Positions 19 through 48,903 of a stretch of DNA of 64,000 nt are shown here, one piece after another. Below the pieces are notes generated by a model. The model saw only the letters and a list, made by a program, of their open reading frames with translations. It did not search any database and was not told where the DNA came from. The translations under genes were made by a program, and so were the position numbers. The first letter of the stretch is position 1. Every line of letters begins with the position of its first letter. Location of the stretch: the IMG/VR virus record IMGVR_UViG_3300028666_000022, positions 62,001 through 126,000 of that record, one strand, 5' to 3'.

Positions 19-2794
19 ATGTTTGATACAATTGCTGTTTTAGTTAGATATTTTAAAGAAAATAAACCAAAGGGCAAAAGAACATGGAAAATTGTAGCAT
101 TTTGGGATACATATAATACTAGAGAATCTAAAATTGAAGAACCTGAGTTATCAGAATCAATTAGAAACGAAGCTTTAAATGAATTGTTTAAACTTTGTCA
201 AGTAAAGACATGGGCAGAATGGAAATCTAAATAAAGATATTATATGATTAATGATTATATTAGTTTAAATTATTGTTATAAAATTGATGGTGAAATTTAT
301 AGAAAATTAGATTTTGAACTAGAATTTTCGTTAAATGTTTATTTAACAAATTCGTTAATTAATCAATTGCGCATTGAATTTGATAATGATTTAACTTCTG
401 CTTTAATTAATGTAATGGAATAATTATGAAAACATTAATCAATTTTTTTAAAAATATTTTTTGTGACATTGTTATTTTCATTCCTGCTCCAAAACAAATT
501 TATTTTAAAATAAATACATTAAAAGATGTTCAACGGTATTTAAATAGTATTATATTCATCAACTCTGGTGGTTGTGGTATTGCTGCATTAGCAATGTTTA
601 AGTGGCTTAAGAAAAACAATTTGATTGAAGAAAATACAACTAATTTTGTATTTCTATATAAATCTGACGATGGAACAGACTATTTAAACAATTCCTCTGT
701 TTTAAAACAAAAATCAGGAATACCAGTAGCTCCAGCACATGTTATTTTATTTCATAAAGGTAATTATATTGATTCTGAAGGCATTGTTGAAGTTAACGAA
801 TATCATTGGTTGCAAAATGTTAATGAAGAAAACTTTGTTGTAAGAGCTAATAATAATTTATTCACATGGTGCGGTTTCTTTGATAGAAACAATATTAAAG
901 ATATTGAGAAAATGTTAGAAATTGATATGGACGATATTTTGATATTAAACTAAGAATGTAACAAAATAAAATTATTTTCGTATAATATTTAAACGATAAA
1001 AATAATCAATATGAAAATAGTATTAAATAAATGTATGAATATCAACGAAATGGTTAATACTGTTAGTTCTTTTTCTAATATTGATACTGCTTTAGATATT
1101 ATTAATAAATTTAAACTGAATGAAAAAGTTGTTTTAATTTGGCATAATAATAAACTTATATTAAAATAAATCATGGAAAAATTAACTGAATCTCAAGAAA
1201 ATAATCTTAAATGGTTAGAAGATTTTAGTGGAGCTGAAAAAGAAGTTACTTTTTCAGATGTTTCTAATATTAGTGATGCAATGAATAATATGTTTTTAAA
1301 CGCTTATCTATATTTTTCAAGCGAATTAGATTCTGAAGATAGAATTAATGAACTAATCGAAATATATAAATCAGGTTATAAATTAATTTTAAATGATTAA
1401 ATTATGAAAGCTATATTGAAAATCGGTGATACTATAAAAATATCAAATAAAAACAAAAATCATTCAGATAATGATGTTTGTGCCTATGCAAATATGTGTG
1501 GTGTTGTAACCAATATTTGGGAAGATAATTCCTTTGCTTTATGTTGTGGAAATTCAACATTAATTGTACCAATGCGAAATGCGTTTAAGAAAAAAATAAA
1601 GGGTATTTGGATATATTTAAATGAAGAATTATTATTTCATAAAAGCAAATAAATTATATGCAAGAATATATTACCACACATAAAAAAGAAAATAAAAACA
1701 AATATATTTATTTTACACAAAAAGTAGAATTAGGTATTGAGAATGAAATTGGTTATGAATTAATGTGGAGTGGTAAAGTTAGTAAAGAAGAATGGAATTG
1801 GTCACAAGAAATTGCTAATGAACAACCAAATAGAGTAATAATAAATGAAAATAATGTTATTTGTATAAAAAATTAAACATGACTGATTTACAAAATAAGA
1901 TATTAGAATTAATGAAATCTCAAGATGAATATGAAAAATGGGGATTTTGTTGTATGGGATATAGAGAAATTTCAAATATATTAAAACTAGAAGCTATATC
2001 AGTATCTAATTCAATGCGAACAATGTACAAAAAGGGTATATTAACTAATTATTATTGTAAAGATCAATATGATGATACCCATTATGAATTAAGAAACCCT
2101 AATTTTAAAAAATGATTTATGAAAACAAAAGAAGAAATTTATAAACAAATTGATAAGGCTATGGAAGCCATTAATGAAGGTGGAAAATTTAATGGAATGT
2201 CTTATGAAGATGGCGTAAAATATGCATTAGAATGGGTATGTGGTGATTCGGATGAAGAACCAATGCCAGAAGAAAATTAATGATAAAATAATTTTATTTT
2301 CGTATATTATTAAAAACATTATTATGAAAAATACCGAAAAAGCAATTGAATGGTGGAATAGTTTAGGTAATTTATATAAAAGAAAATTAACCACAGAACA
2401 TTTTGTTGGGAGAAGAGTTAATACATTATGTGATTCTGAAATTGAAGTAATTTATAATGACTTTAATAATTTTGATTTACCTGAAGATTGTACATCATTC
2501 AATGATATAATGTATGATTACAATAAAACAATTAAAATGAAAAAATATAATATTAATAATTATATAATAATTTACCCAAATGAAAGTGGTTGGAGGAAAA
2601 TTATTGAATTAACCCAATCACATTATGAATTAACTCAAGAAAAAGCAAATGATTGGGTTAATATTAGAAAAGAAAATGGTGGTTTTAAAGAACAATTATG
2701 GGTGTTAATTTCAATTTATTATGAAATGTTTTTCAATGGAGAAAAATATTTTAATACTGCAATAATTGATTTATGTGGTGAAGTTATTGAATAA
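19..2794 (+). CDS. Cluster of small hypothetical phage proteins (19..234, 426..953, 1173..1400, 1404..1652, 1658..1876, 1861..2115, 2240..2794)
   Basis: Tightly packed, co-oriented short ORFs with AT-rich leaders; no recognisable motifs. Confidence 0.6.
958..982 (+). promoter_or_regulatory. ECF-sigma-type promoter GTAAC-N16-CGTA (one of 9 copies)
   Basis: GTAAC at 958-962, exactly 16 nt, then CGTA at 979-982. Same spacing at 7019, 7413, 8350 (ATAAC) and 34721 on +, and at 23218, 23963, 27676 and 58048 on -. Confidence 0.75.
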
Positions 2795-2823
2795 TAATAT
2801 ACAAAAATAAATAATATGAGCTT

Positions 2824-3058
2824 AGAGTATGAAAATAATTAAATTTTCTTTATTGATCTTATGTCAATCGGCTGTACTCCTACAACCTCTACCTTATCTT
2901 ACCTAAGTATTTTAAGGTTACATTTATTAGCTATTATTTTTGATTCAATACTTTCGTATTGTCTTGCTAATTTGTTATTAACTTTTATGATTTTACATTA
3001 CCAAAGTATTAATTTAGGTAATAACCACAATATATCAAAGAACGTAAAGATAAATACT
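2824..3058 (-). ncRNA. Stand-alone TnpB omegaRNA-like cassette A (promoter, boxA-like element, structured leader, scaffold; guide read from 2823 downward)
   Basis: Minus strand encodes a TnpB C-terminal-like remnant (VEVVGVQPIDIRSIKKI*). Hairpins ACCTTA/TAAGGT, GGTTGT/ACAGCC and ATTGA/TCAAT plus pseudoknot GGAGTA/TACTCT parallel the tnpB 3' end at 4082-4187. Segment 2978-3058 is identical (81 bp) to 35945-36025. Confidence 0.7.
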
Positions 3059-3185
3059 GGAAATTATGAAAAAAGTAAATAAAAAGAAGCAGAATTTATT
3101 GCCAATATTAGAGCTGCAATACAAAATGAATTAGGCGAGGATGAGTTTAACATATTAATAAAACATAATTTAAAATATTAATACT

Positions 3186-3892: not shown

Positions 3893-4081
3893 AAAATTTT
3901 TCTAATTTATGTGGTTTATTTAAATAGTTTTAATATATTTACAAAATTTATTTTAACCTAAATAATAGAAAGGAAATTTGTGATGGAAGAAAATATTTGG
4001 AGTGAACTAAGATACGAAGAAACTGCTGAAAATATTGTTAATATTTTTGCTTGACTAACAGGTGAACTCGATGAAATTGGA
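3885..4081 (+). repeat. Diverged ~200-bp direct duplication flanking the IS607-like element (partner 6165-6359)
   Basis: The same intergenic region (atgaataaaa...tttaatatatttacaaaa...aatagaaaggaaa) and gene 5' end occur on both sides. Confidence 0.8.
3983..4081 (+). pseudogene. Truncated 5' copy of ORF 6261..6479, ending at the TnpB element right end
   Basis: MEENIWSELRYEETAENIVNIFA*LTGELDEIG vs MDENIWSELRYEETGENIINIFGWLTGELDETG; TGA at 4052-4054. Confidence 0.9.
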
Positions 4082-4190
4082 ACAGTACAAAATAATATAA
4101 TAATATTACTTCTTTATGATCGAAACCATTGGCGATACTGCAATCACCTCTATCCCATTATCAAACTCGATGTTTGGAATTGCTTTTCTT
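4082..4190 (-). ncRNA. omegaRNA scaffold overlapping the tnpB 3' end; predicted guide TCCAATTTCATCGAGTTCAC
   Basis: Hairpins ATTCCA/TGGGAT, GGTGAT/ATCGCC and ATGGT-TTCG-ATCAT; loop GCAGTA can pair with terminal TACTGT. Confidence 0.7.
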
Positions 4191-5440
4191 AATATATTTA
4201 AACTCCCGTTTAAATCTGCATTTATCAATTTCTTTGATTTTGATCTATATAAACCCCTATAAATTCTTCTACCACTAAATTTATGTTTATTAATATCATT
4301 GTCTTCAATACCAATATTATTATTTTCACATTTTTTATCTTTCTTTTTATACACTGGTATCTCATCTTCATCTATAAAACTAGCCTTACTCGTATAACTT
4401 TCTTCCTGTATTAAGACATTTATACCAAGTAATTTAGCCTTATATTCTAACATCCATATAAACCTACTGTGTGGTATGCCTACAAATTTTTGATTACTCT
4501 CCTTGCCCATATTTATCTCTTGCTTCCACTCCTTATTATTACCAATTATTAAGGTATTAATATTGTTGTCAACTAAATGATTAATAATATATCGACTTGC
4601 TTTATGCAAATAATCATCAACTTTGTTATTCCTTTTATTTGTTAAATTCTTAATTCTATTGCTTGTCCCATATTGTTGTTTTTCTCCTTTCTTATTTATA
4701 TAATGATTTAAATCTGATTTGTAATGAGCTAAATTTTTATTATAATATTGATTAATACTTTTTAATGGTTTACCATTAATAATTATTGATTTAATTACAT
4801 TACTACCTATTGTTGCTAAATTATTTAAACCCAAATCAATACTAGCATACCTATTATTATTTGGCTTTAACTCAACTTCTTTTACTTCATATAATACTTC
4901 AATTACATAATGATTACCTTTTGGTATTACTCTACATTGCTTAATATTTTTAGAATTTATTTTAGTTTTAACCCTAATATTAGTTCTCGATAATTTAACT
5001 ATATTATTTTTTAATTCTTTTTTCGATATAGCATCTAATGTATAAATCAACATAAATCTACCATTTATCTTATCTTTATAATTGGGTAATTCAGGCTTAC
5101 CTTTATATTTAGATTTATTTTTATTATAATCCTTAATAGAAGCAAAGAAAGATTTCCAATTTTTATCTAATTGCATTAGGGTTTGATTTGATATTTTTCT
5201 AGGTAATTGTATATAATCAATATCATTAGAATCAATCATTAATCTATTAATATCATAATAATTTAAATAATTAGCATGATCAACTAAACCTAATTTTTTC
5301 TCATTACTTGTTTTAATAAATTCTTGTCTGATTATATAATTAGCTTTATTGTAAAGGTTTTTACTAAGAAAACATAGTTTATCAATTTCAATAAAATATT
5401 GATTAGATTTTTTAATTATATGTTTTTCTGTTAAAATCAC
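4106..5440 (-). CDS. tnpB: RNA-guided endonuclease TnpB (IS607-associated; rearranged RuvC-II type)
   Basis: SIDLGLNNL (RuvC-I); IIGNN with downstream QEESYTSK; INADLNGSLNI (RuvC-III). Confidence 0.92.
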   Translation of the reverse strand: MILTEKHIIKKSNQYFIEIDKLCFLSKNLYNKANYIIRQEFIKTSNEKKLGLVDHANYLNYYDINRLMIDSNDIDYIQLPRKISNQTLMQLDKNWKSFFASIKDYNKNKSKYKGKPELPNYKDKINGRFMLIYTLDAISKKELKNNIVKLSRTNIRVKTKINSKNIKQCRVIPKGNHYVIEVLYEVKEVELKPNNNRYASIDLGLNNLATIGSNVIKSIIINGKPLKSINQYYNKNLAHYKSDLNHYINKKGEKQQYGTSNRIKNLTNKRNNKVDDYLHKASRYIINHLVDNNINTLIIGNNKEWKQEINMGKESNQKFVGIPHSRFIWMLEYKAKLLGINVLIQEESYTSKASFIDEDEIPVYKKKDKKCENNNIGIEDNDINKHKFSGRRIYRGLYRSKSKKLINADLNGSLNILRKAIPNIEFDNGIEVIAVSPMVSIIKK

Positions 5441-5479
5441 TTTAAATTATTAATGTTATTAAATTATATTTTACTTATT

Positions 5480-6058
5480 TTAGTTTTCAATGAATTGTTT
5501 TATTTCTTCCTTATTCTTCTTTCTCCTTAAGCCATATATCCTTTCTGAAAATGAATAAAATATACTAATTAAATCATTTAGTAAATCTTCTTTATCTTCA
5601 TTTACTTGATTTATTACTAATATTTGTTTTCCTTTTAACTTAAGTAATAATTCAATATAATTAAAACCAAATCTTGTTAATCTATCTTTATTTTCAACAA
5701 TAATCATATTCCAATCATCTCTAACCAATATTTTATTTAATTTAGGACGATTATCATTCATACCTGAAGCAATTTCTTTAATTTCATCAATAATGATATA
5801 CGCATTTTTTGTTGCAAAATCACGTATTCTATTTAATTGATTATCCAATTCTAATTTCTTGTCATTATTAGAAACTCTAGCATATAAAATTACATTGGTT
5901 TGATTATTAATTTCAGGAAATAAGGGTATTTTAACATGGTTGGTTTCATCTAAGAAAGCACCTTTAATTTTACCAGCAACAAATCTATTCCAAGCTGTTT
6001 TATAAGTAACTGAATTTTCTCTTGCATATTCGGATAATTTTTTATATATTTGTTTCAT
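5480..6058 (-). CDS. tnpA: IS607 transposase (HTH + serine recombinase)
   Basis: N-terminal HTH, ILYARVS, EIASG, VENKDRLTRFGF, FSERIYGLR. Confidence 0.92.
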   Translation of the reverse strand: MKQIYKKLSEYARENSVTYKTAWNRFVAGKIKGAFLDETNHVKIPLFPEINNQTNVILYARVSNNDKKLELDNQLNRIRDFATKNAYIIIDEIKEIASGMNDNRPKLNKILVRDDWNMIIVENKDRLTRFGFNYIELLLKLKGKQILVINQVNEDKEDLLNDLISIFYSFSERIYGLRRKKNKEEIKQFIEN

Positions 6059-6260
6059 GAATAAAATGTTTTATATTTGTATATATAAATACTATTAATG
6101 TAGAAAAAGTTTATATAAATTTCAATAATTTTACATATTAATTATAATTAGTTTAAAATATGTAATGAATAAAATTTATAATTAATGTGTTTTAATTTAA
6201 AAATTTTTAATATATTTACAAAAATTATTTTAATTTAAACAATAGAAAGGAAAGTGAGTC

Positions 6261-6479
6261 ATGGATGAGAATATTTGGTCAGAATTACGTTATGAAGAAA
6301 CTGGTGAAAATATTATTAATATTTTTGGTTGGTTAACAGGCGAACTAGATGAAACAGGAATTGCTATTATTGAAATCAATGTTTTAACTGGTTTTGTAAC
6401 TTATCTTGATGAAAGAGCTAAAGACGATTTATACGCTCAGGAAGCAGTTCAAGAAGTTTTTGATATTTACGGTTTATAA
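6261..6479 (+). CDS. Hypothetical protein (intact copy of the gene truncated at 3983-4081)
   Basis: ORF track; paralog alignment. Confidence 0.8.
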   Translation: MDENIWSELRYEETGENIINIFGWLTGELDETGIAIIEINVLTGFVTYLDERAKDDLYAQEAVQEVFDIYGL

Positions 6480-6676: not shown

Positions 6677-7030
6677 ATGAAATCCCTTACTCAAGAAATT
6701 CTTAATGAATTTGTTCTTGATTTAAAGAAGAATCGATTCAAAGATATTATCAAAGATCTTAAAATAGATTTGTCTTCTAATGAAGACAATACAGAATACA
6801 TTTATCTAGGTTTAATCATTCTTAGGAAAAAAGAAAGACATAAGGGATATGGTTCATTAATCATGAAAGAAATTATATCTTTAGCAAACGAATATAATCT
6901 TCCAATTAAGTTATACTCAACAGCAGCTTATGGTTCAAAGATTGATAAACTAAATGAATTTTATAATAAACATGGTTTTGTTTTAGATAATTTAATGTTG
7001 TGTTATTTTCCAAAAATTGTAACAAAATAA
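6677..7030 (+). CDS. GNAT-family acetyltransferase
   Basis: RHKGYGS motif A; FYNKHGF motif. Confidence 0.75.
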   Translation: MKSLTQEILNEFVLDLKKNRFKDIIKDLKIDLSSNEDNTEYIYLGLIILRKKERHKGYGSLIMKEIISLANEYNLPIKLYSTAAYGSKIDKLNEFYNKHGFVLDNLMLCYFPKIVTK

Positions 7031-7993
7031 ATTAATTTTCGTATAATTTTTAATTTAAAATTAATAAATGAATAATATAAAATATATTGAACCCAATAAA
7101 AGCTTAATGGGGCGAATATTTAGATTTTTTGGTATTGAATTAAACACTAAATTCAATGATGGATATTTTCATACATTTGGTTATTCTGGAAAACAAAAAA
7201 ATAATAAAAGAGATATTATCATAATAGAAAAATTAGATGGAAATGTCATTAGTATACCTAACAATAAAAAATATTATACGTTTCAGAATAATTTTATTTA
7301 TAGTGGACACATTAAAAATATTGAAAAGACTATAGATAATAAACATAACACATTATTTTTAAATGAAAAAATAAGTGTTAATTGGGACGCATAAATTATT
7401 TTTAAAGAATTAGTAACAAATTAGATTAATTTTCGTAATATAAACTATAATCAACAAAACAATAAAATTTATGAAAAAAGAACAACAATGTAAAATATGT
7501 AATAATAAAAAACTAATTGAAGTATTGGTTATGGGAACGGATGTTGATTGGGTGGAATGCCCATATTGTTCGAATAAATCAGAATATATTAAATTTCAAA
7601 ACTCAGTTAATTAATAATCTTATGAAAGAATTAGAAATATCAATTAAGATCCTAAAGGAAGATAAAACAGAATTAGAATGTAAACTTTATTATTTCTTTA
7701 GAAATGGAAGAGTTCCAGATGATAATGAATATTATGAAATGATGGAATTATTAGAAAATTGGTCAATAATAAAATCAAATATTAAGTGTGTCGAAGATAT
7801 TCAAAAAACAATTATTAATAATATTTAGAATATGATAATTTACACTGAAGCAACAATCAACTACATGGCTAACTTGGGTTTAAACAACGAAATTCAAGTT
7901 ATTTTAGCTAATAGTGTGGTAAAAGAAACTGAAAAATTAAAGGTTAAATATGTTGTAATGAATGAAATTCCCGAAACAATTTAGTTTGAAATC

Positions 7994-10351: not shown

Positions 10352-10570
10352 ATGAAAAAGAAGTTTAATAAAATTATGGAAGATTTAAAAAATAAAAATC
10401 TAATTGTTGTTCGAGTTAATAAAATAGAATTTGAATTAGATAATGGAGATATTTATCCTATCCCATTCGAATTAGATGTTGATGAAAATATTACTCTCGA
10501 AGAATTTCAAAAAATATTAAATGATTCAAAAGATGATATTATAAAAATACTTGATAAATATAATGAGTAA
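10352..10570 (+). CDS. Small protein upstream of tnpA, inside the element
   Basis: ORF overlapping the tnpA start. Confidence 0.6.
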   Translation: MKKKFNKIMEDLKNKNLIVVRVNKIEFELDNGDIYPIPFELDVDENITLEEFQKILNDSKDDIIKILDKYNE

Positions 10571-11189
10571 ACTATTATCATTACAAAAAGTATCAGAAAT
10601 ATTGGGTGTAACTAAGAAAACATTAAGAATATGGGATAATGATGGTAAATTAGTTAGTATTAAAACTATTGGTGGTCATAGAAGATATAAAGAAGATGAT
10701 GTTAATAAATACATCGGTGAATATGTTGAAGTTAATATTAATAATGTTTTAACATATAGTAGAGTAAGTAGTCATGAACAAAAAACCAAAGGAGATTTAG
10801 ATAGACAATCACAAAGAATAAGTGAATATTGTGCTAAGAAAAAATACAAAGTAGAATATATTATTAAAGATGTTGGTTCAGGACTATCAGATACAAGAAG
10901 TGGATTTGTTAAAATGGTTGATTTGGTAATTAAGAGAAAAATTAATAAAGTAATCATTGAAAATAAAGATAGATTAACCAGATTTCAATTTAATTTAATT
11001 AAAGTATTTTTTAATAGTTATGATGTGGAAATTGAATGTATTGAAAATACGAATATATCAAATGAAGAAGAATTTGTAAATGATATAATGATGTTAATGG
11101 CAAGTTTTTCTGGTAAATTATATGGTAAGAGAAGTGTGAAACGTAAAAAAGAATTAAAAGAACAAAAATTAAAAGATAAAAATTTTTAA
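10551..11189 (+). CDS. tnpA: IS607 transposase (MerR-like HTH + serine recombinase)
   Basis: LGVTKKTLRIWD...GGHRRY, YSRVSS, DVGSGL, ENKDRLTRF, SFSGKLYG. Confidence 0.93.
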   Translation: MINIMSKLLSLQKVSEILGVTKKTLRIWDNDGKLVSIKTIGGHRRYKEDDVNKYIGEYVEVNINNVLTYSRVSSHEQKTKGDLDRQSQRISEYCAKKKYKVEYIIKDVGSGLSDTRSGFVKMVDLVIKRKINKVIIENKDRLTRFQFNLIKVFFNSYDVEIECIENTNISNEEEFVNDIMMLMASFSGKLYGKRSVKRKKELKEQKLKDKNF

Positions 11190-11205
11190 AACGATACTAA
11201 TTATT

Positions 11206-12003
11206 ATGAAATTAATTCAGAAATATTTAAAAACCGATGATGAGATTGAATTATTAAGAGAGAGTAATTTATTAGTATCAAAAACACTTGCAGAAATTGC
11301 TAAAAATATAAAAGTTGGCGTTTCTACACTTTATCTTGATAAAATTGCTGAAGAGTTTATTATGGATAATAATGCAATACCTGCTTTTAAAGGATATAAT
11401 GGATTTCCAAATACATTATGTACATCAGTAAATGATGAAATAATTCATGGAATTCCATCTGATTATATTTTGAATGAAGGTGATATAATATCGGTTGATT
11501 GTGGTGTGATATTAAATGGATGGTATGGAGATAGTGCTTATACGTTTCCTGTTGGTAAAATTTCAAAGGAAATACTGCAATTATTGGTATATACTAAAGA
11601 ATCTCTTAAAGAAGGAATAAAAAAAGCAATCATAGGAAATAGAATTGGTGATATTTCTTATGCAGTTCAAACTAAAGTAGAAAGTGGTGGATATAGTGTT
11701 GTAAGAGAAATGGTTGGTCACGGTATTGGAAGAAATCTTCATGAAGAACCTAATATTCCAAATTATGGTAAGCAAGGAACGGGAATAAAACTTGAAAAGG
11801 GACTTGTAATATGTATTGAACCAATGATAAATCTTGGAAAAAGAGAAATGTTGTTAATGAAGGATGGATGGACAATAAAAACTGCTGATGGAAAACCTTC
11901 AGCACATTTCGAAAAAGCAATTGTGATTCACAAAGAAAAAGCAGATATATTAACAAATTTTGATTTTATTGAAAAAATTTTAGATAATAATGAAAATAAT
12001 TAG
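11206..12003 (+). CDS. map: Type I methionine aminopeptidase
   Basis: CTSVNDEIIHGIP, SVDCG, GDSAYT, GHGIG..HEEP, CIEPM, SAHFE. Confidence 0.95.
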   Translation: MKLIQKYLKTDDEIELLRESNLLVSKTLAEIAKNIKVGVSTLYLDKIAEEFIMDNNAIPAFKGYNGFPNTLCTSVNDEIIHGIPSDYILNEGDIISVDCGVILNGWYGDSAYTFPVGKISKEILQLLVYTKESLKEGIKKAIIGNRIGDISYAVQTKVESGGYSVVREMVGHGIGRNLHEEPNIPNYGKQGTGIKLEKGLVICIEPMINLGKREMLLMKDGWTIKTADGKPSAHFEKAIVIHKEKADILTNFDFIEKILDNNENN

Positions 12004-13126
12004 GTCAACTAAATGTAGTTTGAAGTTTTCTACTAAAAAGAAAATAAATGATTTGTCAACTATATTAGCAGAATATGCTAAAGTGGTTAATATTTTCATA
12101 AATTATTTTTGGTTAAATCCTGACAATACAAATAAAAATAAATTATTAAAAGAAATAGTTGATTTACCTTCAGAAACATGGTTGAGTGCAAGATTAAGAA
12201 AAGTGGCAGCAAGAGAAGCGATTGATATGATAAATGCATCTAAATTAAGATGGAAAAATAAAGCAGTAATTCCTGTTCATAAAGGAAATAGGATGTATGT
12301 TAGTTGTACCATTGCTGACTTAGTTCCTACTAAAAACACTAATTATAAAACTGAAGAAAGTCTTAGATTCGATGCTTGGTTGCATATACAATCAATTGGA
12401 AATAAAATGATAATGGATTTACCAATTAAATATCATAAACATTTTAATAAGTATAATAATATAGGTAAAAGATTAAACTCATACATAATAACAAAGAATT
12501 ACGTTCAGTTTAGTTTTGAAATTAATACACAACCTAAGAAAGAAGGTAAGAAATGTATTGGTATAGATACTGGTATTAACGCACTTGCTAGTTTGAATAA
12601 TGGTAATCAATATGGAAAAGATATTAAGGAATGTATTGAAAGAGTAAAAAGATGTCAACAAAAATCAAAAGGATGGTATGTTGCTAAAAGAGCATTAAAA
12701 CAGCGTATTGATGAAGTAGTAAAAGAATTAATGATAAAAGAGAATCCTGATTTAATAGTTGTGGAACGACTAAAGAATATGGGAGTTAAATCAAAAGCCA
12801 AACGTTTATTGGCTAAAAATATTAGACGTTCTATTGGAACATGGAACTGGAAGTATTGGTTAAAAAGGTTAGAAGGATATTGCGAAATTAACCGTGTTAG
12901 TTTTCGTTCGGTATTACCTTATTATACCAGTACAACTTGTCCTGTATGTGGTCATTCTGATAGGGGAAACCGAAATGGAAAGATATTCTTATGTCTTAAA
13001 TGTGAACACAAAGACAATGCTGATATAAATGCAGGAAAGAATATTTTAAATCGGTTTCTTATGGGACTCTACGGTGTCCATTACAAAGAATGTGAAGATG
13101 TACAATTTTGTGCAACTTTAGTTTAA
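11990..13126 (+). CDS. tnpB: RNA-guided endonuclease TnpB
   Basis: GIDTG, VVERL, TSTTCPVC...CLKC zinc ribbon, NADINAGKNI. Confidence 0.9.
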   Translation: MKIIRSTKCSLKFSTKKKINDLSTILAEYAKVVNIFINYFWLNPDNTNKNKLLKEIVDLPSETWLSARLRKVAAREAIDMINASKLRWKNKAVIPVHKGNRMYVSCTIADLVPTKNTNYKTEESLRFDAWLHIQSIGNKMIMDLPIKYHKHFNKYNNIGKRLNSYIITKNYVQFSFEINTQPKKEGKKCIGIDTGINALASLNNGNQYGKDIKECIERVKRCQQKSKGWYVAKRALKQRIDEVVKELMIKENPDLIVVERLKNMGVKSKAKRLLAKNIRRSIGTWNWKYWLKRLEGYCEINRVSFRSVLPYYTSTTCPVCGHSDRGNRNGKIFLCLKCEHKDNADINAGKNILNRFLMGLYGVHYKECEDVQFCATLV

Positions 13127-16055: not shown

Positions 16056-16150
16056 CTAATGTTAAGAATTTTAAACGTTTCATAGATTGTGCCTATTGTT
16101 ATAGGTCTTATTTTATCTCCACGTCTGTTATCGTTAGTCCCTAACGATTG
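16027..16150 (-). ncRNA. IS200/IS605-type omegaRNA and right end; predicted guide AAATGCCTTTGTTTCTAAAC
   Basis: Ends GGTAGTTCAC; hairpins ATCGTTAG/CTAACGAT, CCTAT/ATAGG and TTCTTAAC/GTTAAGAA; GTGGA/TTCAC pseudoknot. Confidence 0.75.
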
Positions 16151-17354
16151 TAATATTATCTTTGGTATTAATAGTTTGATTTTCATTAATTAAATCATTA
16201 TTAATACCACTCTCTTTTACTTTTCTTCCTTCTTTTAAAATATTTAAGGCTGCATTTAGATCCCTGTCATGTTTCATCCCACATTTAGGACAAATCCACT
16301 CTCTTACCTTAAGAGTCAAGTTCTGGTTAATATACCCACATTCATTACATGCCTTACTTGAAGGATAAAAACGGTTTATTTTAGTGATAGTTTTATCACT
16401 CCAATTAGCTTTATATTCAAGCATGTTAATGAATTTGCCCCATGAGGCATCTGATATTGACTTATTTAATCCTGACTTAGCTGACTGACCATTAGGTAGG
16501 TATTTACCATTATCATCCTGTTTTGGTTTACAAGATTTTAACATACCTTTAATATTCAAGTCTTCTAAATAAATTTGATCATATTTTTTTATTAAATCTG
16601 TACTGATCTTATGTAAATTATCTACACGAGAATTGGTTATCTTCTTATGTATTCTCGCTACCTTTAATCTTTGTTTTTCATATCTATTACTTCCTTTAGT
16701 TTTTCTACTTAAATGTTGCTGTCCCCTTTTTAGCTTTTTCGCATATGTCTTTGTATATTTATTGTTTTTATATTTATAACCATCTGATGTAATAATTAGA
16801 TCCTTAATTCCCAAATCAATACCAACCTCTTTACCAGTTTTAGGTAACTTAACATGAGATGTTTCAACCAAAATAGAAACAAAATATTCATTAGTTGGTG
16901 TTTTAGAAACAGTGCATTGATGTATTTCACCTTTAAATTTTCTGTCAATTATAATTGGTATTCCTTCTTTAAATTTAGGTATATGTAATTTATTTTTTAT
17001 TAACTTTGTAAATTGTGGCACACAAAAACTATTTCTATCATGCTTACTCTTAAATCTTGGAAACCTTGTTCTTCCCTTAAAGAAACCATTATAAGCTCCA
17101 TCTAAACATTTAAGAGATTGTTGCATGGATTGAGAATTAGTTTCATTTAACCAAGTAAAATCATTATTTTGTTTTAGTGTGGTGAGAGATTTACAATTAT
17201 CAACATAACTTAAACCTTGTTTATTTGTTTTGTATTCTTCAATCCTTTCGTTTAAATAATAGTTATAAACAAACCTAATACACCCAAAATGTTTATTTAA
17301 TAAGATCATTTGGTTATTATCAGGTTTTAGTTTATATTTGTAAGCTTTTAACAT
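16134..17354 (-). CDS. tnpB: RNA-guided endonuclease TnpB (IS200/IS605 OrfB type), no adjacent transposase
   Basis: MLKAYKYKL..HFGCIRFVYN, GIDLG, YLEDL, PSSKACNEC...WICPKC, HDRDLNAA. Confidence 0.95.
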   Translation of the reverse strand: MLKAYKYKLKPDNNQMILLNKHFGCIRFVYNYYLNERIEEYKTNKQGLSYVDNCKSLTTLKQNNDFTWLNETNSQSMQQSLKCLDGAYNGFFKGRTRFPRFKSKHDRNSFCVPQFTKLIKNKLHIPKFKEGIPIIIDRKFKGEIHQCTVSKTPTNEYFVSILVETSHVKLPKTGKEVGIDLGIKDLIITSDGYKYKNNKYTKTYAKKLKRGQQHLSRKTKGSNRYEKQRLKVARIHKKITNSRVDNLHKISTDLIKKYDQIYLEDLNIKGMLKSCKPKQDDNGKYLPNGQSAKSGLNKSISDASWGKFINMLEYKANWSDKTITKINRFYPSSKACNECGYINQNLTLKVREWICPKCGMKHDRDLNAALNILKEGRKVKESGINNDLINENQTINTKDNITIVRD

Positions 17355-17453
17355 TTATTCTATTCTGTTACTTTAGAATAAATACTAAAATATTTTAAAA
17401 AAGTCAAGAATGTTTAATTTATTTTAATTATATTTGTAGTAAATGATTATATT

Positions 17454-23000: not shown

Positions 23001-23187
23001 AACAACTATAGTTTCTAACACCAGCTAGAAATCCAAACATACTATATGATCTCCAATCAAAAGGATTGTCACCCTTTTCTTTATTATAATACTTACGATT
23101 AAATTCATCTAATGAAAAATGTTCTTTAACTATTTCCCATTTATTATTTCTTCTTACTTCAGCAAAAGAATGAATATCACATCCCAT
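20036..23187 (-). CDS. Cluster of hypothetical phage proteins (incl. 20308..21084 and 22666..23187)
   Basis: Co-oriented ORFs below the promoter copy at 23218-23242. Confidence 0.6.
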
Positions 23188-23230
23188 ATTATTAATATTA
23201 TTAAGTTAAATATATTATACGTAATTAATT

Positions 23231-23926
23231 TTATTTTGTTACAACTAGTTTACATTTTATTAAAAATCTTAAAAAATTTAAATAAGCAAATAATCTTCTA
23301 AATCCTTTTAAATTTGATTTTATTTTGTAAGTGAAATACAATTCATAAATTAATTGAAAATAATTAGGTAATCTTGTTTGAATTAAATCCCATGCCATTG
23401 CATCAGCACCTTCTTCACTATTATCATTATTAAGTTTTATTGAGAAATGATGTCCTATTTCATGGAAAAATGTTCCATAATAATATTTAATATTATAAAA
23501 TCTATCTTCAATTGAACATAATAATATTTTGGGATAGTGAAGTTCTTCTTTTATTATATTACTTTCATAATTTGCTAATTTACAAATTTCTTCATATGTT
23601 TTATGGTATTTCTTTTCAAGATCATTTATTTGTTTCAATGTTTTATTTAATGAATTTAAATATTCGACATCTGTAACATAAATATATTTTCCCAATGCTT
23701 TATTATCTTCATTAGAAATATTAATATTTAATTCATCGTATGTTTTAATAAAAACAGAAATATTTTCTTTTTTACAAATATTTATTGCAGTTTTTTCTAA
23801 TACCTCGATTAATGAAGGATATTTTTTAAAATCAAATAACAATATAAATATATTAAATTGTATTATATATAAAAATATTAGAGAAATTAGTAACAAAACA
23901 AATAATGTAATCATTGTTAGTATCAT
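23231..23926 (-). CDS. Membrane-anchored HExxH metallopeptidase-like protein
   Basis: N-terminal hydrophobic helix; FFHEIGH...SEEGAD. Confidence 0.6.
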   Translation of the reverse strand: MILTMITLFVLLLISLIFLYIIQFNIFILLFDFKKYPSLIEVLEKTAINICKKENISVFIKTYDELNINISNEDNKALGKYIYVTDVEYLNSLNKTLKQINDLEKKYHKTYEEICKLANYESNIIKEELHYPKILLCSIEDRFYNIKYYYGTFFHEIGHHFSIKLNNDNSEEGADAMAWDLIQTRLPNYFQLIYELYFTYKIKSNLKGFRRLFAYLNFLRFLIKCKLVVTK

Positions 23927-23983
23927 AATTTTAATGTTAAATTGTTTATACTATCTGTAATATACGTAAATAGATTTATTTTG

Positions 23984-24505
23984 TTACAATTTTTTAATTA
24001 ACTTTTCTTTTAATTTCCATATTCGTAAACATCCTAATGTAGCAACTTTTAATTTTTCTTCAGTAGTTAATTTCCTACACTCTTTAATTCTACTTGCTTC
24101 TTTATCTATTCTAGCAAAACATCTACCATTTTCATATTTACTACATGTTATTATTCCAGCATCTTCTGGAATAAATTCAATACTTTTCTCTAATAGTTCA
24201 ATAGGTATTGCATAGTATAACTTGCTTATTCTATTTTGTTTATCTTTGTGGTTGTGTCGTTTTTTAAAATCTGCCTTAAGATCAGAAATACTTCTTTTAA
24301 TTTCTACTTCAATAGCGAAACCAGATTTCATAATTATAAAAAGATCGGTTTCATGCATTCCTACTAGTCCCCATGAAATATTTGGTACTATTATATGAGT
24401 TCTTATTCCAAACAGTTTAGAAATAGCTACCTCCATTTCAATTAATGAAATGGTTTTAGATTTAATGATATTTGATTTTCTTTTTATTCCCATTTCACTC
24501 ATCAA
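23984..24505 (-). CDS. PD-(D/E)XK nuclease-like protein
   Basis: ETDLF...EVEIKRSISDLKADFKK. Confidence 0.65.
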   Translation of the reverse strand: MMSEMGIKRKSNIIKSKTISLIEMEVAISKLFGIRTHIIVPNISWGLVGMHETDLFIIMKSGFAIEVEIKRSISDLKADFKKRHNHKDKQNRISKLYYAIPIELLEKSIEFIPEDAGIITCSKYENGRCFARIDKEASRIKECRKLTTEEKLKVATLGCLRIWKLKEKLIKKL

Positions 24506-34771: not shown

Positions 34772-35770
34772 ATGAAAAAGATTTTAATTATATTATCAGT
34801 TCTTTTGTTTACATTTACTGGATTTTCACAATCAAGTATATTTCTAAACAAAATTTCTGATACTGAATTATCCCAAGCATATACAACAACCTTTTATGAA
34901 GGTCATCAAAGAAAATATAATAAAACCATTGAAGATTTTATTCAAGAATTTATTCAAGAATATGGTAAAGATGAATTAAATCTAGTTCTTTCTAAAATAG
35001 AAGATAATACACTTGACGATTATCTTAAATCTATTGATGATAAAGAATTAAATTTTGAAATAATTGCACTTAATTACGTTCTATTGAATAAACTTTCATT
35101 TGTTTCAAATGGTAAAATTTTTGTACTTACTTATGAACCAATAAAAAGTAGAAAATCATTTGATAGGGACTTAGATATTATTAGTGAAAAAAATTTATAT
35201 CTTTATCGTAGAGATGATGATGGTTGGAAAAAAGCATCTGATTTAATTAGAGTTGATTTCTTTTCTGATGTTTCGAGTAGAGAAGTAGATTATCATACTA
35301 CACATTTCAATGATGGTGAAGAAGTATTTTCTCCATATAGGTTGGGTTTCGGTATTGTTAAAAAGACTTCAAATAATTGGGTTTACATTACTTTTAAAAC
35401 AATATCTTGGCATTCTAATGTTGGTTATCAGAATTATAATTCAATATTAGTTTTAGTTCCCAAAGATAATAAAGAATATAATATATCTTTATTTGAACCA
35501 GAAAATAAGATTGGTAAAATAATTAAAAGATATCCTCTAAAGGTTTATAATTATAGTAATCAAATTTGGAATGAATATTTAAAAGACATAAATCTACCAG
35601 TATTATATGGTTTAAGTAAAATAGAATATGTTGAAATAGATAATGGTTTAACAATAAATTATTTCGATGGTAATAAAAATAAACCAATTACTGCGGGAAC
35701 ATTAAAATTCGAAAAGATTGATAATCAGATTATTTGTAGTGGTACAATTAAAATGAATAAAATTAAATAA
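34772..35770 (+). CDS. Secreted hypothetical protein
   Basis: Signal peptide MKKILIILSVLLFTFTGFSQ; promoter copy at 34721. Confidence 0.7.
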   Translation: MKKILIILSVLLFTFTGFSQSSIFLNKISDTELSQAYTTTFYEGHQRKYNKTIEDFIQEFIQEYGKDELNLVLSKIEDNTLDDYLKSIDDKELNFEIIALNYVLLNKLSFVSNGKIFVLTYEPIKSRKSFDRDLDIISEKNLYLYRRDDDGWKKASDLIRVDFFSDVSSREVDYHTTHFNDGEEVFSPYRLGFGIVKKTSNNWVYITFKTISWHSNVGYQNYNSILVLVPKDNKEYNISLFEPENKIGKIIKRYPLKVYNYSNQIWNEYLKDINLPVLYGLSKIEYVEIDNGLTINYFDGNKNKPITAGTLKFEKIDNQIICSGTIKMNKIK

Positions 35771-35783
35771 ATCTCACACATGG

Positions 35784-36025
35784 ACAGTACGTAATAACAT
35801 ATAATTTATATTAACTCTTTATGGTCGAAACCATTGGCGATACTGCAATCACCTCTATTCCATTATCAAACCGATGTTTGGAATTGCTTTTATTAGCTAT
35901 TATTTTTAATTCAACATCTAAAAGATATTGTCTTGCTAAATTGTTTAACTTTTATGATTTTACATTACCAAAGTATTAATTTAGGTAATAACCACAATAT
36001 ATCAAAGAACGTAAAGATAAATACT
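35784..36025 (-). ncRNA. Stand-alone TnpB omegaRNA cassette B; predicted guide CCATGTGTGAGATTTATTTA
   Basis: 35816-35891 matches 4111-4187 (2 substitutions + 1 loop indel); same ACAGTAC end; leader shared with cassette A. Confidence 0.8.
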
Positions 36026-36074
36026 ATAAATTTTGAAAATTTTAAATAAATTTATATAAAAATTATAATAAGTT

Positions 36075-46172: not shown

Positions 46173-46206
46173 TTTAATATAATTTATTATAAATACTTTA
46201 ATAAAT

Positions 46207-47124
46207 TCAATTATTTATATTACCACTTTTAATATGTCTATTAGTATATGAACAAAGTGGTTGAAGATTAGTATAATGATTTAATTTAATTATATCTTCT
46301 TCTGTTTTTGCTGTTGATAATGGTATGATATGATCAAGATCCCATGCAGTATTTATTTCTGTTGGATAACCATTCCAATTACCATAATTTGACCAATTCA
46401 TCCAAGGTTGAAATAATTTCTCAATATGATTTTTAAATTCTTCAAAACTACAATCTAAAATTGTTTCAGTTTTTGATGTTTTTGCATAACCCATTCTTTT
46501 TATTGATGTTGATATTAAAGATCTAATGGTAATTGTTAATTTATATTGTATGTCTTCTGATTTTCTTTTCTTTTTATATTCTTTATTATATAATTTTTTC
46601 TTTTCTTTATTTTTTAAATTATATTTTTTTGTGGTATTAATATATTTATTTCTATTCTCTTTAGTTTTTTTACTAATTTTCTCTTTATTATTAAAATAAT
46701 ATTCAGATCGTTGGTTTTTTATTTTTTCTTTGTTTTCTTCATGATATTCTTTCTGATATTCATCAATTTTCTCTTTATTTTTTTCGACATATTTTTTATT
46801 TTTTAAAATAATTTTTTCTTTATTGGTTTCATAATACTCTTTATTTTTTTCAACAATTTCGTCATGATGATCATTATAGCGTTTATTACTACGTTTTTTT
46901 ATTGTTTCTTTGTTTCCAACATAATACTTAGCTAATTTCTTTTTTAATTTTTCTTTGTTTTTTTGAGCATACTCTTTTTTATATTCTGATATTTTTTCTT
47001 TATTCTTCTCACAATATTCTTTATTATATTCTTTTCCTAGTTGTTTCAATTTTTCCTTATTCTTTTCACGATATTTTTTATTATATTCTTTATCGTATTG
47101 TGCTTTTTCTTCTTTTGATTTCAT
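46207..47124 (-). CDS. HNH-type homing endonuclease with Lys-rich repeats
   Basis: Repeated Y.EKNKEKI; WDLDHIIPL...NHYTNLQPL..N..K. Confidence 0.8.
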   Translation of the reverse strand: MKSKEEKAQYDKEYNKKYREKNKEKLKQLGKEYNKEYCEKNKEKISEYKKEYAQKNKEKLKKKLAKYYVGNKETIKKRSNKRYNDHHDEIVEKNKEYYETNKEKIILKNKKYVEKNKEKIDEYQKEYHEENKEKIKNQRSEYYFNNKEKISKKTKENRNKYINTTKKYNLKNKEKKKLYNKEYKKKRKSEDIQYKLTITIRSLISTSIKRMGYAKTSKTETILDCSFEEFKNHIEKLFQPWMNWSNYGNWNGYPTEINTAWDLDHIIPLSTAKTEEDIIKLNHYTNLQPLCSYTNRHIKSGNINN

Positions 47125-48239: not shown

Positions 48240-48903
48240 TTAATTTGTTTTATTTAAATTACATTTATTTTTATATTCTTTTGCTGCTTCAATTAATTTA
48301 GCATTAGGTTCTTTAGGATTTAAAAGAGCATCAAAAAAGACATCCTTATCTTTCTGAGATTTTAAAATTTCCGTGTATTTCATATCATTATTTTTGTAAA
48401 ACATTATCCCGCCAATATTTATAAAAAGAATCATAATATGATTCAACCTTCTTGACAATCATATCGTTGTCTGGATTATCAGCACTGAAATCTGGTAAAT
48501 AATTAAATTCAACTCCACTTGTTTTTTCATCTGGAGTTACTTTATAAACAAATTGAATAACACCATCAATAGTACCACCCCAAAAAATAAGATCATCAGT
48601 AACTTTTAAGTCAATAAAATCAATATCGACATTCATATCATCAAAGAAATTACGAAACTTTTCTTCTTCTCTATCTTGATCTAAATTAGTTTTTTTGTTT
48701 ACGTTTGGAGTTTCATCATTATCTTCTATATCTTCATTTAACTTACGTGTTATTTTAAGCATATCACGCATGGTTAAATCTTTTTTTGTTTGTTCATTAG
48801 ATTCATCCATTACATAATCATTCTTACGCATTCTATGAATGAGCGTTCTCATTTGGTTTGGCGTTGATTTATTGTTCATTTTATATTTTATAATAAATAC
48901 TTT

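What the first reader, a model, noticed from the sequence alone, without database searches (positions are those of the whole stretch)
2923..3058. Shared structured 5' leader with a boxA-like element on both guide cassettes
SEEN: 2978-3058 equals 35945-36025 exactly (81 bp). On the minus strand it reads AGTATTTAT promoter motif, GTTCTTTGATATATTG, then an ATTACC/GGTAAT stem. A TTAGC/GCTAA stem then encloses a hairpin that varies in sequence but still pairs (CAATAC-GAAA-GTATTG vs CAATATCT-TTT-AGATGTTG). KNOWN: GTTCTTTG resembles the boxA antitermination site of stable-RNA leaders. INFERENCE: a dedicated ncRNA expression or processing module joined to two different omegaRNAs. This is hard to explain by simple internal deletion of the local IS.
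Basis: partly seen in the sequence, partly recalled or inferred. Interest (0 to 1): 0.7.

Follow-up and report, generated by a model that had tools for sequence, protein, structure and literature searches.

The report
Phage mini-IS607 guide-RNA cassettes, shared leader
Two small protein-less relics of an IS607 transposon in a 340-kb phage each carry a TnpB guide-RNA scaffold behind the phage's own late-gene promoter and a strikingly invariant 5' leader, so one nuclease probably serves several guide genes, but the proposed boxA antitermination signal is not supported.

Summary
The window lies in a complete 339,898-bp, 25% GC jumbo phage.

Each copy sits in a ~265-nt cassette on the minus strand:
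- a short IS607 left-end remnant containing AGTATTTAT
- a ~125-nt non-coding leader
- a ~110-nt omegaRNA scaffold core that matches a covariance model built from tnpB-linked omegaRNAs
- an IS607-type right end
- flanking DNA that would serve as the guide

AGTATTTAT is a real promoter-type motif. It has 54 copies in the phage, and 33 lie 5-60 nt upstream of an ORF start, including the portal and terminase genes.

A third cassette occurs at a different site in a 92-95% identical phage, so the unit is mobile or polymorphic. Across the three cassettes the first 81 nt are invariant, while the rest diverges by 12-35%.

The leader has no detectable source in the resident IS607. It has no Rfam match and no homolog in 12 related phage records.

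The boxA-like word occurs at chance frequency and is predicted to be base-paired.

Verdict: these are non-autonomous IS607-derived trans-guide cassettes with a lineage-specific, constrained leader. This is a new variant of a known kind. The leader's function is unproven.

The parts
2823..3083 (-). Cassette 1 as a whole: left-end remnant, promoter core, leader, omegaRNA core and right end
   Evidence: Repeat family D4. CM R1 hits the core at G000 64823-64928, which is window 2823-2928 (E 4.6e-14). CM R2 hits the leader. The antisense ORF 2861-3082 is not conserved in frame between alleles.
3050..3058 (-). AGTATTTAT, the phage late-type promoter core. The preceding ~25 nt (3059-3083) are homologous to IS607 left ends.
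   Evidence: Genome-wide motif statistics. The motif sits upstream of the portal and terminase genes. Alignment with the left ends of the local IS, L056 and L057.
2978..3049 (-). Invariant transcribed 5' leader. It contains the boxA-like GTTCTTTGATATATTG (3028-3043) and the long hairpin P2 (2985-3030, including ATTACC/GGTAAT).
   Evidence: Identical in cassette 1, cassette 2 and L054. Fold predictions. The boxA-like word occurs at chance frequency.
2929..2977 (-). Variable part of the leader: helix P3 (GTTAA/TTAGC), variable hairpin P4 (2946-2961), and the 3' strand of P1 (2939-2944)
   Evidence: L054 carries an 18-nt palindromic insertion in the P3 loop and a changed P4 loop. Cassette 2 has a longer P4.
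2823..2928 (-). omegaRNA scaffold core of cassette 1 (three hairpins, right end ...TTTCATACTCT). The presumed guide is the ~20 nt that follow, about 2804-2823.
   Evidence: Alignment A4 and RNAalifold covariation. CM R1. The guide matches only its own flank within the genome.
35783..36050 (-). Cassette 2 as a whole. Promoter core 36017-36025; invariant leader 35945-36016; variable leader 35895-35944; omegaRNA core 35783-35894; presumed guide about 35764-35783.
   Evidence: core about 89% identical to the tnpB 3' end. CM R1 E 4.7e-16. CM R2. Relatives carry a 128-144 aa gene at this position.
4081..6190 (-). Resident IS607, the presumed supplier of TnpB in trans. tnpB 4106-5440; tnpA 5480-6058; omegaRNA core 4081-4190; promoter core AGTATTTAT 6085-6093; left end reaching to about 6190.
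   Evidence: Pfam OrfB_IS605, Cas12f1-like_TNB and Resolvase. The RuvC D/E/D columns are invariant in the TnpB alignment. Left-end extent comes from alignment with L056. CM R1 E 5e-17.

Best explanation
The two repeats are the 5' halves of two protein-less, IS607-derived mini-elements, which I read as stand-alone omegaRNA genes. Each has five parts in order:
1. A truncated IS607 left end that carries the phage's late-type promoter core AGTATTTAT.
2. A ~125-nt untranslated leader. Its first ~70 transcribed nt are invariant. Its 3' part carries variable hairpins.
3. A ~110-nt omegaRNA scaffold with three hairpins.
4. An IS607-type right end, ...TACT(G/C)T.
5. Flanking DNA that serves as the guide.

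Inferred mechanism: the cassettes are transcribed late in infection, antisense to their neighbours, as pre-omegaRNAs of about 250 nt. The 5' extension is trimmed by TnpB, as is known for other TnpBs. The scaffolds are loaded onto the TnpB of the resident IS607 about 1 kb away. The complexes cut cassette-free alleles of the same sites, for example in co-infecting relatives, and recombinational repair then copies or retains the cassette.

The leader most likely supplies expression and 5' protection or processing context for a guide RNA that is no longer embedded in a tnpB mRNA. Its likeliest origin is a microhomology-mediated fusion of a left end to the 3' part of a tnpB from a related IS607, not the resident one. 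After that fusion the sequence diverged and recombined with other right ends.

Shown: the anatomy, the homology, the promoter-motif statistics, covariation in the core, the presence/absence polymorphism, and the uneven conservation. Inferred: transcription, use by TnpB in trans, homing, and the role and origin of the leader.
For: Cassette identity:
- The resident element is an IS607, and its TnpB keeps the RuvC triad.
- The cores of both cassettes match CM R1, built from tnpB-linked omegaRNAs, at E 4.6e-14 and 4.7e-16.
- 14 of the 22 predicted core pairs show compensatory changes. Some of these distinguish the cassette 1 and L054 alleles from the tnpB-linked copies.
- Cassette 2's core is about 89% identical to the resident tnpB 3' end and right end.
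- The left edge aligns with the left ends of three autonomous IS607 copies.

Promoter:
- AGTATTTAT precedes 33 ORF starts against 2.9 expected, including the portal and terminase genes.
- It also precedes tnpA in the local IS; L056 has the same word before its tnpA and L057 a one-base variant (AAGTATTTTAT).

Mobility:
- A third cassette (L054) sits between two genes that abut directly in this phage. Its flanks are 92.6% and 95.3% identical to this phage.

Constraint on the leader:
- There are 0 differences in the first 81 nt in all three pairwise comparisons.
- Beyond that point, cassette 1 and L054 differ by about 19 events in 155 nt (Fisher p = 2.7e-4).
- Cassettes 1 and 2 are 65% identical in the core (p = 1.7e-9).

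Precedent and origin:
- Phage G002 has an unambiguous left-end/omegaRNA cassette joined at an 8-nt microhomology.
- The 13-mer GATATATTGTGGT is shared with L056's tnpB at a collinear offset (1 of 400 shuffles).

Literature:
- Non-autonomous PATE-like elements that carry omegaRNAs used in trans are described in PMC10055086.
- 5' processing of the pre-omegaRNA by TnpB is described in 10.1101/2023.11.20.567912.
Against: - No RNA data exist. No RNA run was listed for this phage, so transcription, the RNA ends and processing are all untested.
- The cassette promoter departs from the motif consensus downstream of AGTATTTAT. It has C at +9 and lacks the AAA at +12 to +14.
- Cassettes 1 and L054 lack the outer ~100 nt of the left end seen in the autonomous copies, so mobilisation by TnpA is doubtful. 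Exact element boundaries could not be defined from the filled and empty sites.
- Cassette 1's core is only about 60-65% identical to the resident omegaRNA. Whether the resident TnpB accepts it is unknown.
- Collinear global alignment of the leader with tnpB 3' regions is not significant (z between -1.6 and +1.6). The proposed origin therefore rests on one 13-mer, which was noticed post hoc.
- The guides match nothing except their own flanks.
Confidence: 0.6

Rival explanations
1. The leader is a stable-RNA-type expression module in which GTTCTTTGATA acts as a boxA site. It would recruit NusB/NusE, with the adjacent hairpin playing a boxB-like role, to make transcription of the untranslated guide RNA termination-resistant.
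For: The word lies 10-20 nt downstream of a promoter-type motif and just upstream of a hairpin. It is invariant in three cassettes. From my own recollection, not checked here, it resembles Gram-positive rrn boxA (GTTCTTTGAAAA).
Against: GTTCTTTG occurs 14 times in the phage against 9.9 expected, and GTTCTTTGA 3 times against 3.7. Its UUUGAU is paired with AUCAAA/AUUAAA in the minimum-free-energy folds of all three alleles, whereas boxA acts as a single strand. The whole 81 nt is invariant, so the boxA-like word is not specifically conserved. The host and its boxA consensus are unknown. A ~250-nt AU-rich RNA has little obvious need for antitermination. There is no Rfam leader or antitermination family hit.
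Confidence: 0.07
2. The cassettes are decaying, non-functional IS607 debris. On this view the 81-bp identity reflects a recent duplication or a gene-conversion tract between copies, not selection for any leader function.
For: The identity tract has sharp edges. Cassette 2 looks chimeric, with leader like cassette 1 and core like the resident IS. The left ends are truncated. The guides match only their own flanks.
Against: The same 81 nt are also identical in a different phage strain at a different locus. That strain's flanking genes differ by 5-7%, which gives P(0 differences) of about 0.007 at the flank rate. The rest of that cassette differs by about 12%. Core hairpins show compensatory changes between cassette alleles. 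Leader changes fall in loops or preserve pairing: G-C to G-U, an insertion in a loop, and a longer P4.
Confidence: 0.2
3. The invariant segment works at the DNA level. It would be a recombination or binding site for the IS607 serine recombinase TnpA, or for another DNA-binding protein, allowing cassettes to be mobilised or exchanged.
For: The segment abuts left-end-homologous sequence. IS607 ends carry recombinase binding sites (general knowledge). There is a presence/absence polymorphism.
Against: The left ends of the resident IS, L056, L057, L005 and L006 contain nothing similar beyond AGTATTTAT and about 6 further bases. TnpA's own ends therefore lack this sequence. The outer left-end terminus is missing from the cassettes. 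The variable parts behave like RNA stems and loops.
Confidence: 0.1

Closest known systems
IS607-family TnpB omegaRNA (reRNA), the guide RNA encoded at the tnpB 3' end and right end
   Same: The cassette cores are homologous to the tnpB-linked scaffolds (CM R1). They share the three hairpins, the conserved TAGAGG and AGTA segments, and the right end ...TACT(G/C)T, with flanking DNA in the guide position.
   Different: The cassettes are not attached to any tnpB. The part that would normally be tnpB coding sequence is replaced by a non-coding leader. The tnpB-linked copies show no conserved structure in that upstream region.
PATE-like non-autonomous IS200/IS605 elements that carry omegaRNAs used in trans (Meers et al., PMC10055086)
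   Same: Both are protein-less elements derived from left and right ends. Both encode an omegaRNA that must use a TnpB encoded elsewhere. Here there are several copies and a polymorphic site.
   Different: The parent is IS607 (serine recombinase), not IS605. The host is a jumbo phage. The left end is truncated and carries a phage late-type promoter. An extra ~110-nt leader of unknown origin is present.
Left-end/omegaRNA deletion cassette in related phage G002
   Same: Same architecture in principle: a left end with an ACTATTTAT promoter-like core, fused to the last ~135 nt of tnpB plus the right end. It is a stand-alone copy, in a tRNA cluster.
   Different: The G002 cassette is a transparent single deletion of its resident IS at an 8-nt microhomology, and it has no novel leader. 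The cassettes studied here cannot be derived this way from the resident IS.
boxA antitermination sites of rrn leaders and lambda nut
   Same: A short U-rich word, GUUCUUUGA, near the 5' end of an untranslated transcript and followed by a hairpin.
   Different: No statistical, structural or comparative support was found. Binding to Nus factors was not tested.
CRISPR leader plus array, and the separately encoded guide RNAs of TnpB-derived TldR (10.1101/2023.11.30.569447)
   Same: Functional analogy only: one effector served by guide genes transcribed independently of the effector gene, behind a common upstream sequence.
   Different: There are no repeats or spacers, and each guide has its own full scaffold and promoter. 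The TnpB here keeps its RuvC residues, unlike the nuclease-dead TldR.

Membership tests
IS607-type TnpB omegaRNA | Sequence and structure homology to scaffolds encoded at tnpB 3' ends | tested here: met
   CM R1, built from 9 sequences including 6 tnpB-linked copies, scores cassette 1 at 89.7 bits and cassette 2 at 100.1 bits. Because the cassettes were in the seed alignment, the match is partly by construction. Independent support: cassette 2 is 89% identical to the tnpB 3' end by BLAST.
IS607-type TnpB omegaRNA | Conserved secondary structure supported by covariation | tested here: met
   RNAalifold on A4 predicts 22 pairs, 14 of them with compensatory double changes.
IS607-type TnpB omegaRNA | Encoded overlapping or just downstream of a tnpB gene | tested here: not met
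   Both cassettes are intergenic, about 1 kb and 31 kb from tnpB. There is no TnpB remnant by tblastn, and stops occur in all frames.
IS607-type TnpB omegaRNA | Bound by TnpB and directs TAM-dependent DNA cleavage | not testable with these tools
   Needs RIP-seq and interference assays.
Non-autonomous (MITE/PATE-like) IS607 derivative | Carries both transposon ends and no transposase or nuclease gene | tested here: inconclusive
   The right end is present. The left end is represented only by its inner ~25-65 nt; the outer terminus seen in the local IS and L056 is absent. There is no conserved ORF.
Non-autonomous (MITE/PATE-like) IS607 derivative | Presence/absence polymorphism or several insertion sites | tested here: met
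   Three sites in two phages that are 92-95% identical. The L054 site is empty in this genome. However, the insertion there is about 540 nt, larger than the cassette itself.
boxA (NusB/NusE) antitermination leader | boxA word over-represented or specifically conserved relative to background | tested here: not met
   14 observed against 9.9 expected for GTTCTTTG, and 3 against 3.7 for GTTCTTTGA. Conservation is not specific to the word, because all 81 nt are invariant.
boxA (NusB/NusE) antitermination leader | Single-stranded boxA RNA bound by NusB/NusE | not testable with these tools
   Folding predicts that it is paired in P1. Binding was not tested.
Any described RNA family (Rfam 15), including group I intron/IStron and RAGATH-18 | Match to a curated covariance model | tested here: not met
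   Only a tRNA reaches gathering score in the window. In the cassette regions, nothing scores better than E = 0.66.

The most novel reading that the evidence does not exclude
The invariant leader could be a dedicated RNA domain, for example a loading, processing or stabilising handle, or a site for a phage factor. That would turn omegaRNA scaffolds into interchangeable plug-in guide genes. A jumbo phage would then run one TnpB with several independently transcribed, late-expressed guides behind a common leader. This would be a natural intermediate between transposon-bound TnpB-omegaRNA and a leader-driven multi-guide system, used for homing or competition between co-infecting phages.
Probability: 0.15. 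Interest if true: 0.8.

Novelty: new variant of a known kind. Interest (0 to 1): 0.45.

Why it matters
TnpB is the ancestor of Cas12, and how guide genes became separated from the nuclease gene is an open evolutionary question. Here a phage carries stand-alone guide-RNA genes that share a promoter and a strongly constrained leader but differ in scaffold and guide. They lie next to a single matching TnpB. If the RNAs are functional, this gives a compact natural system for studying three things: trans-acting omegaRNAs, their 5' processing, and RNA-guided homing in phage populations. If they are not functional, the locus still documents how IS607 decays into promoter-plus-guide relics.

Tried and rejected
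Database searches for the leader:
- Rfam at gathering score and at E up to 10 gave no family for the cassettes.
- Exact-pattern scans of viral contigs with three patterns returned nothing or chance hits.
- The metagenome scan found this phage itself, L054, and two chance hits, L051 and L053.
- The prokaryote-genome scan found one chance hit in a Prevotellaceae coding region.
- INPHARED blastn gave no match.
- BLAST and CM R2 searches of 12 related jumbo-phage records found no leader homolog.

Derivation of the leader from the resident IS:
- The best local alignment, inside tnpB, scores no better than 3 of 156 random genome chunks.
- Collinear alignment to eight tnpB 3' regions is not significant.

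Other ideas rejected:
- A conserved antisense ORF. The frames differ between alleles.
- AGTATTTAT as the left-end terminus or a terminal inverted repeat. The left ends of the local IS and L056 extend about 130 nt further.
- Co-transfer of flanking gene sequence with the L054 cassette. Not significant.
- A remnant of the 128-144 aa gene that relatives carry at the cassette 2 site. None was found.
- Secondary targets of the guides, or sequences complementary to the leader, within the phage. None beyond chance.
- A group I intron next to the G002 cassette. No Rfam hit.

Population and expression data:
- No RNA-seq run was listed.
- Contigs from public DNA runs showed only the two known contexts plus one cassette 1 allele.
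- Other assemblies of the phage are identical or break at the repeat.

Full report
**Context.** The window is bases 62,001-126,000 of a complete 339,898-bp phage genome with direct terminal repeats. It is 25% GC and was assembled from rhizosphere metagenomes. On the minus strand at 4106-6058 lies an IS607: a serine-recombinase tnpA (5480-6058) and a tnpB (4106-5440), both identified by Pfam. The RuvC D/E/D columns of this TnpB are invariant in an alignment with four relatives.

**Checking the observation.**
- 2978-3058 and 35945-36025 are identical over 81 bp, and the exact match extends no further on either side.
- Weaker similarity runs 25 nt further upstream (106 nt at 94%) and about 50 nt further downstream.
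- The genome holds only these two copies.

**Cassette anatomy.** Read on the minus strand, each repeat is the 5' part of a ~265-nt unit.
- Downstream of the leader, cassette 2 (35783-35894) is about 89% identical to the last ~85 nt of the resident tnpB plus the ~25-nt right end.
- Cassette 1 (2823-2928) is only about 65% identical to cassette 2 in this part, but it folds into the same three hairpins.
- I aligned these cores with the tnpB 3' ends of five (six tnpB-linked copies counting the resident IS) related phage IS607/TnpB loci and with a third cassette. RNAalifold predicts 22 pairs, and 14 of them show compensatory double changes.
- A covariance model built from this alignment (R1) finds exactly three hits in the genome: the IS and the two cassettes.
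- The cassettes therefore carry genuine omegaRNA scaffold cores, right ends of the family type (...TACTGT or ...TACTCT), and flanking DNA in the guide position.
- They encode no protein. The antisense ORFs that overlap them are in different frames in different alleles.

**The left edge and the promoter motif.**
- The ~35 nt ending in AGTATTTAT align with the left ends of three autonomous IS607 copies: the resident one, L056 and L057. In those copies the motif (a one-base variant, AAGTATTTTAT, in L057) lies 20-26 nt upstream of the tnpA start codon.
- My first idea, that AGTATTTAT is the transposon terminus, was wrong. The left ends of the resident IS and L056 remain alignable for about 130 nt further upstream.
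- The motif is instead a phage promoter-type element. The genome has 54 copies against 33 expected. Of these, 33 are followed by the start of an ORF of at least 50 aa within 5-60 nt, against 2.9 +/- 1.6 for random positions. The extended consensus is T-rich, then AGTATTTAT, then A-n-n-AAA.
- Genes behind the motif include the portal protein and the large terminase, so it is most likely the late promoter.
It also means the IS607 family in these phages, and its cassettes, are wired into phage late transcription.
- The cassette version departs from the consensus just downstream of the core.

**The leader itself.** About 125 nt lie between the promoter core and the scaffold core.
- I found no source for this sequence. 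The best local match to the resident IS is at background level: 3 of 156 random genome chunks score as well.
- Collinear alignment with the 125 nt upstream of the core in eight tnpB genes is not significant.
- Rfam has nothing. Phage GenBank records have nothing.
- A structure-aware model of the leader (R2) finds nothing in 12 related jumbo-phage records, even at E up to 1.
- The tnpB-linked omegaRNAs show no conserved structure at all in the corresponding upstream 130 nt. The leader is therefore not a copy of a conserved 5' omegaRNA domain. The ~110-nt core is probably the whole functional scaffold.
- One lead on origin: the 13-mer GATATATTGTGGT occurs in the leader 109 nt upstream of the core, and in L056's tnpB 94 nt upstream of its core. 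Only 1 of 400 dinucleotide shuffles gives such a collinear match. ATATATTG also occurs at the same offset from the promoter core in L005's left end.
- Phage G002 contains an unambiguous stand-alone cassette made by joining its left end to the last ~135 nt of tnpB at an 8-nt microhomology.
- An analogous fusion in a related IS607, followed by divergence, is therefore my preferred origin. The support is thin, and the 13-mer was noticed post hoc.

**A third allele, mobility and constraint.**
- A metagenome scan for a 20-mer of the leader found a 1.5-kb contig, L054, from another sample.
- Its flanks are 92.6% and 95.3% identical to this phage at 213.9-214.8 kb. In this phage the two genes there abut directly, with no cassette. 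The cassette is therefore a presence/absence polymorphism between near-identical phages. The extra DNA in L054 is about 540 nt, larger than the cassette, so exact boundaries could not be read off.
- At the cassette 2 site, relatives carry a 128-144 aa gene of which no trace remains here.
- Conservation is strikingly uneven. The first 81 nt are identical in all three cassettes. Downstream, cassette 1 and L054 differ by about 19 events in 155 nt (Fisher p = 2.7e-4). Cassettes 1 and 2 fall to 79% identity in the rest of the leader and 65% in the core (p = 1.7e-9).
- At the divergence of L054's flanking genes, zero changes in 81 nt has a probability of about 0.007.
- A further cassette 1 allele in a public DNA run also has all six of its differences downstream of 2978.
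- Either strong purifying selection or repeated conversion acts on the promoter and 5' leader.

**Leader structure.**
- The minimum-free-energy folds of all three alleles agree on a four-helix arrangement: P1 (UUUGAU of the boxA-like word with AUCAAA/AUUAAA), P2 (a 14-bp interrupted hairpin containing ATTACC/GGTAAT, with a 14-nt loop), P3 (GUUAA/UUAGC) and P4 (the variable hairpin).
- The differences between alleles are all compatible with this fold. They are: G-C to G-U in P1, U-A to U-G in P4, three extra pairs and a new loop in P4 of cassette 2, a loop change in L054, and an 18-nt palindromic insertion in the P3 loop of L054.
- There is no double compensatory change in aligned columns. P2 and the 5' strand of P1 are invariant. 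The z-scores are modest (-2.5, -0.9, -1.2).
- The structure is plausible but not demonstrated.

**boxA.** GTTCTTTG occurs 14 times in the phage against 9.9 expected, and GTTCTTTGA 3 times against 3.7. The word is predicted to be paired, and it is no more conserved than its neighbours. I rate this reading as unlikely but untested.

**Mechanism.** Two points come from the literature:
- Protein-less PATE-like elements often encode omegaRNAs that must be used in trans (PMC10055086).
- IS607 TnpB cleaves the empty donor joint and trims its own pre-omegaRNA with the RuvC site (10.1101/2023.11.20.567912).

By analogy, I propose the following. The cassettes are late-transcribed pre-omegaRNAs that load onto the resident TnpB. 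They direct it to cassette-free alleles of their own sites, which favours retention and spread through recombination in the replicating phage DNA pool. The guides match only their own flanks, as this model expects. The phage has three other TnpB-family genes, at 16134-17354, at 11990-13126 and at about 15.3 kb in the genome. Their 3' regions do not match R1, so the resident IS607 TnpB is the only candidate partner.

**Limits.** No RNA run was listed for this phage. Transcription, RNA ends, TnpB binding, cleavage, the TAM and any Nus involvement all remain inferences.

Noticed in passing
G000 genome-wide; in the window e.g. 6085-6093(-), 17378-17386(-), 46189-46197(-), 48893-48901(-): AGTATTTAT(A)nnAAA is a recurrent promoter-like motif. 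It has 54 copies, and 33 lie 5-60 nt upstream of an ORF start, including the portal and large terminase genes. It is probably the phage late promoter.
   Followed up: yes
window 10551-13126 (+): A second IS607-like unit of a different clade: a MerR-HTH serine recombinase (10551-11189), an M24 metallopeptidase passenger gene (11206-12003) and a 378-aa TnpB-like protein (11990-13126). Its 3' end does not match the omegaRNA model R1.
   Followed up: partly
window 16134-17354 (-); also G000:C1 about 15.3 kb (+), outside the window: Two IS605-type TnpB genes (406-407 aa, with the HTH_OrfB_IS605 N-terminus). The one in the window is preceded by the late-type promoter motif and followed by its own, different, omegaRNA-like 3' region. 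The phage therefore holds four TnpB-family genes in total.
   Followed up: partly
window 3915-4085 (+) versus 6165-6479 (+): The IS607 right end abuts a truncated paralog of gene 6261-6479, with the same promoter/RBS block (62 nt at 89%). The truncated copy has an in-frame TGA where the intact paralog has TGG. The rest of that gene is missing beyond the IS left end.
   Followed up: partly
L059 (phage G002, G002:C1:14122-14300, minus strand): A stand-alone left-end/omegaRNA cassette formed by deletion at the 8-nt microhomology ACAAATAT. It lies directly after a truncated tRNA-like 5' half, up to the anticodon loop, inside a phage tRNA cluster. Rfam finds no group I intron there.
   Followed up: partly
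L091 (G000:C1:311216-314704, minus strand): The portal-protein ORF is 1162 aa and has an HNH-endonuclease-like segment (residues ~480-680) between portal-like parts. This may be an intein or an inserted homing-endonuclease domain.
   Followed up: no
window 934-992, 6995-7053, 23187-23244, 23932-23993: A second conserved promoter-like block, TGTAACAAAATAAA...TTTTCGTATAAT, which is sigma-70-like with a perfect TATAAT. It is repeated in both orientations and is probably an early or host-RNAP promoter class.
   Followed up: no
window 59530-60459 and 46669-47082: Two sets of diverged tandem repeats: five 186-189-nt units at 59.5-60.5 kb (65-76% identical), and 45-nt units inside ORF 46207-47124. 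These are probably repeat-containing proteins.
   Followed up: no
L054:1005-1055: In the related phage, the extra DNA beside the third cassette contains three tandem copies of a 15-nt unit (ATAAGCTGTTGATAA).
   Followed up: no
window 3011-3038 (-) and 35978-36005 (-): Inside the leader, TTGATA-16 nt-TAAATT is a weak sigma-70-like promoter match (9 of 12), at chance level for this AT-rich region. If it were used, transcription would start inside hairpin P2.
   Followed up: no
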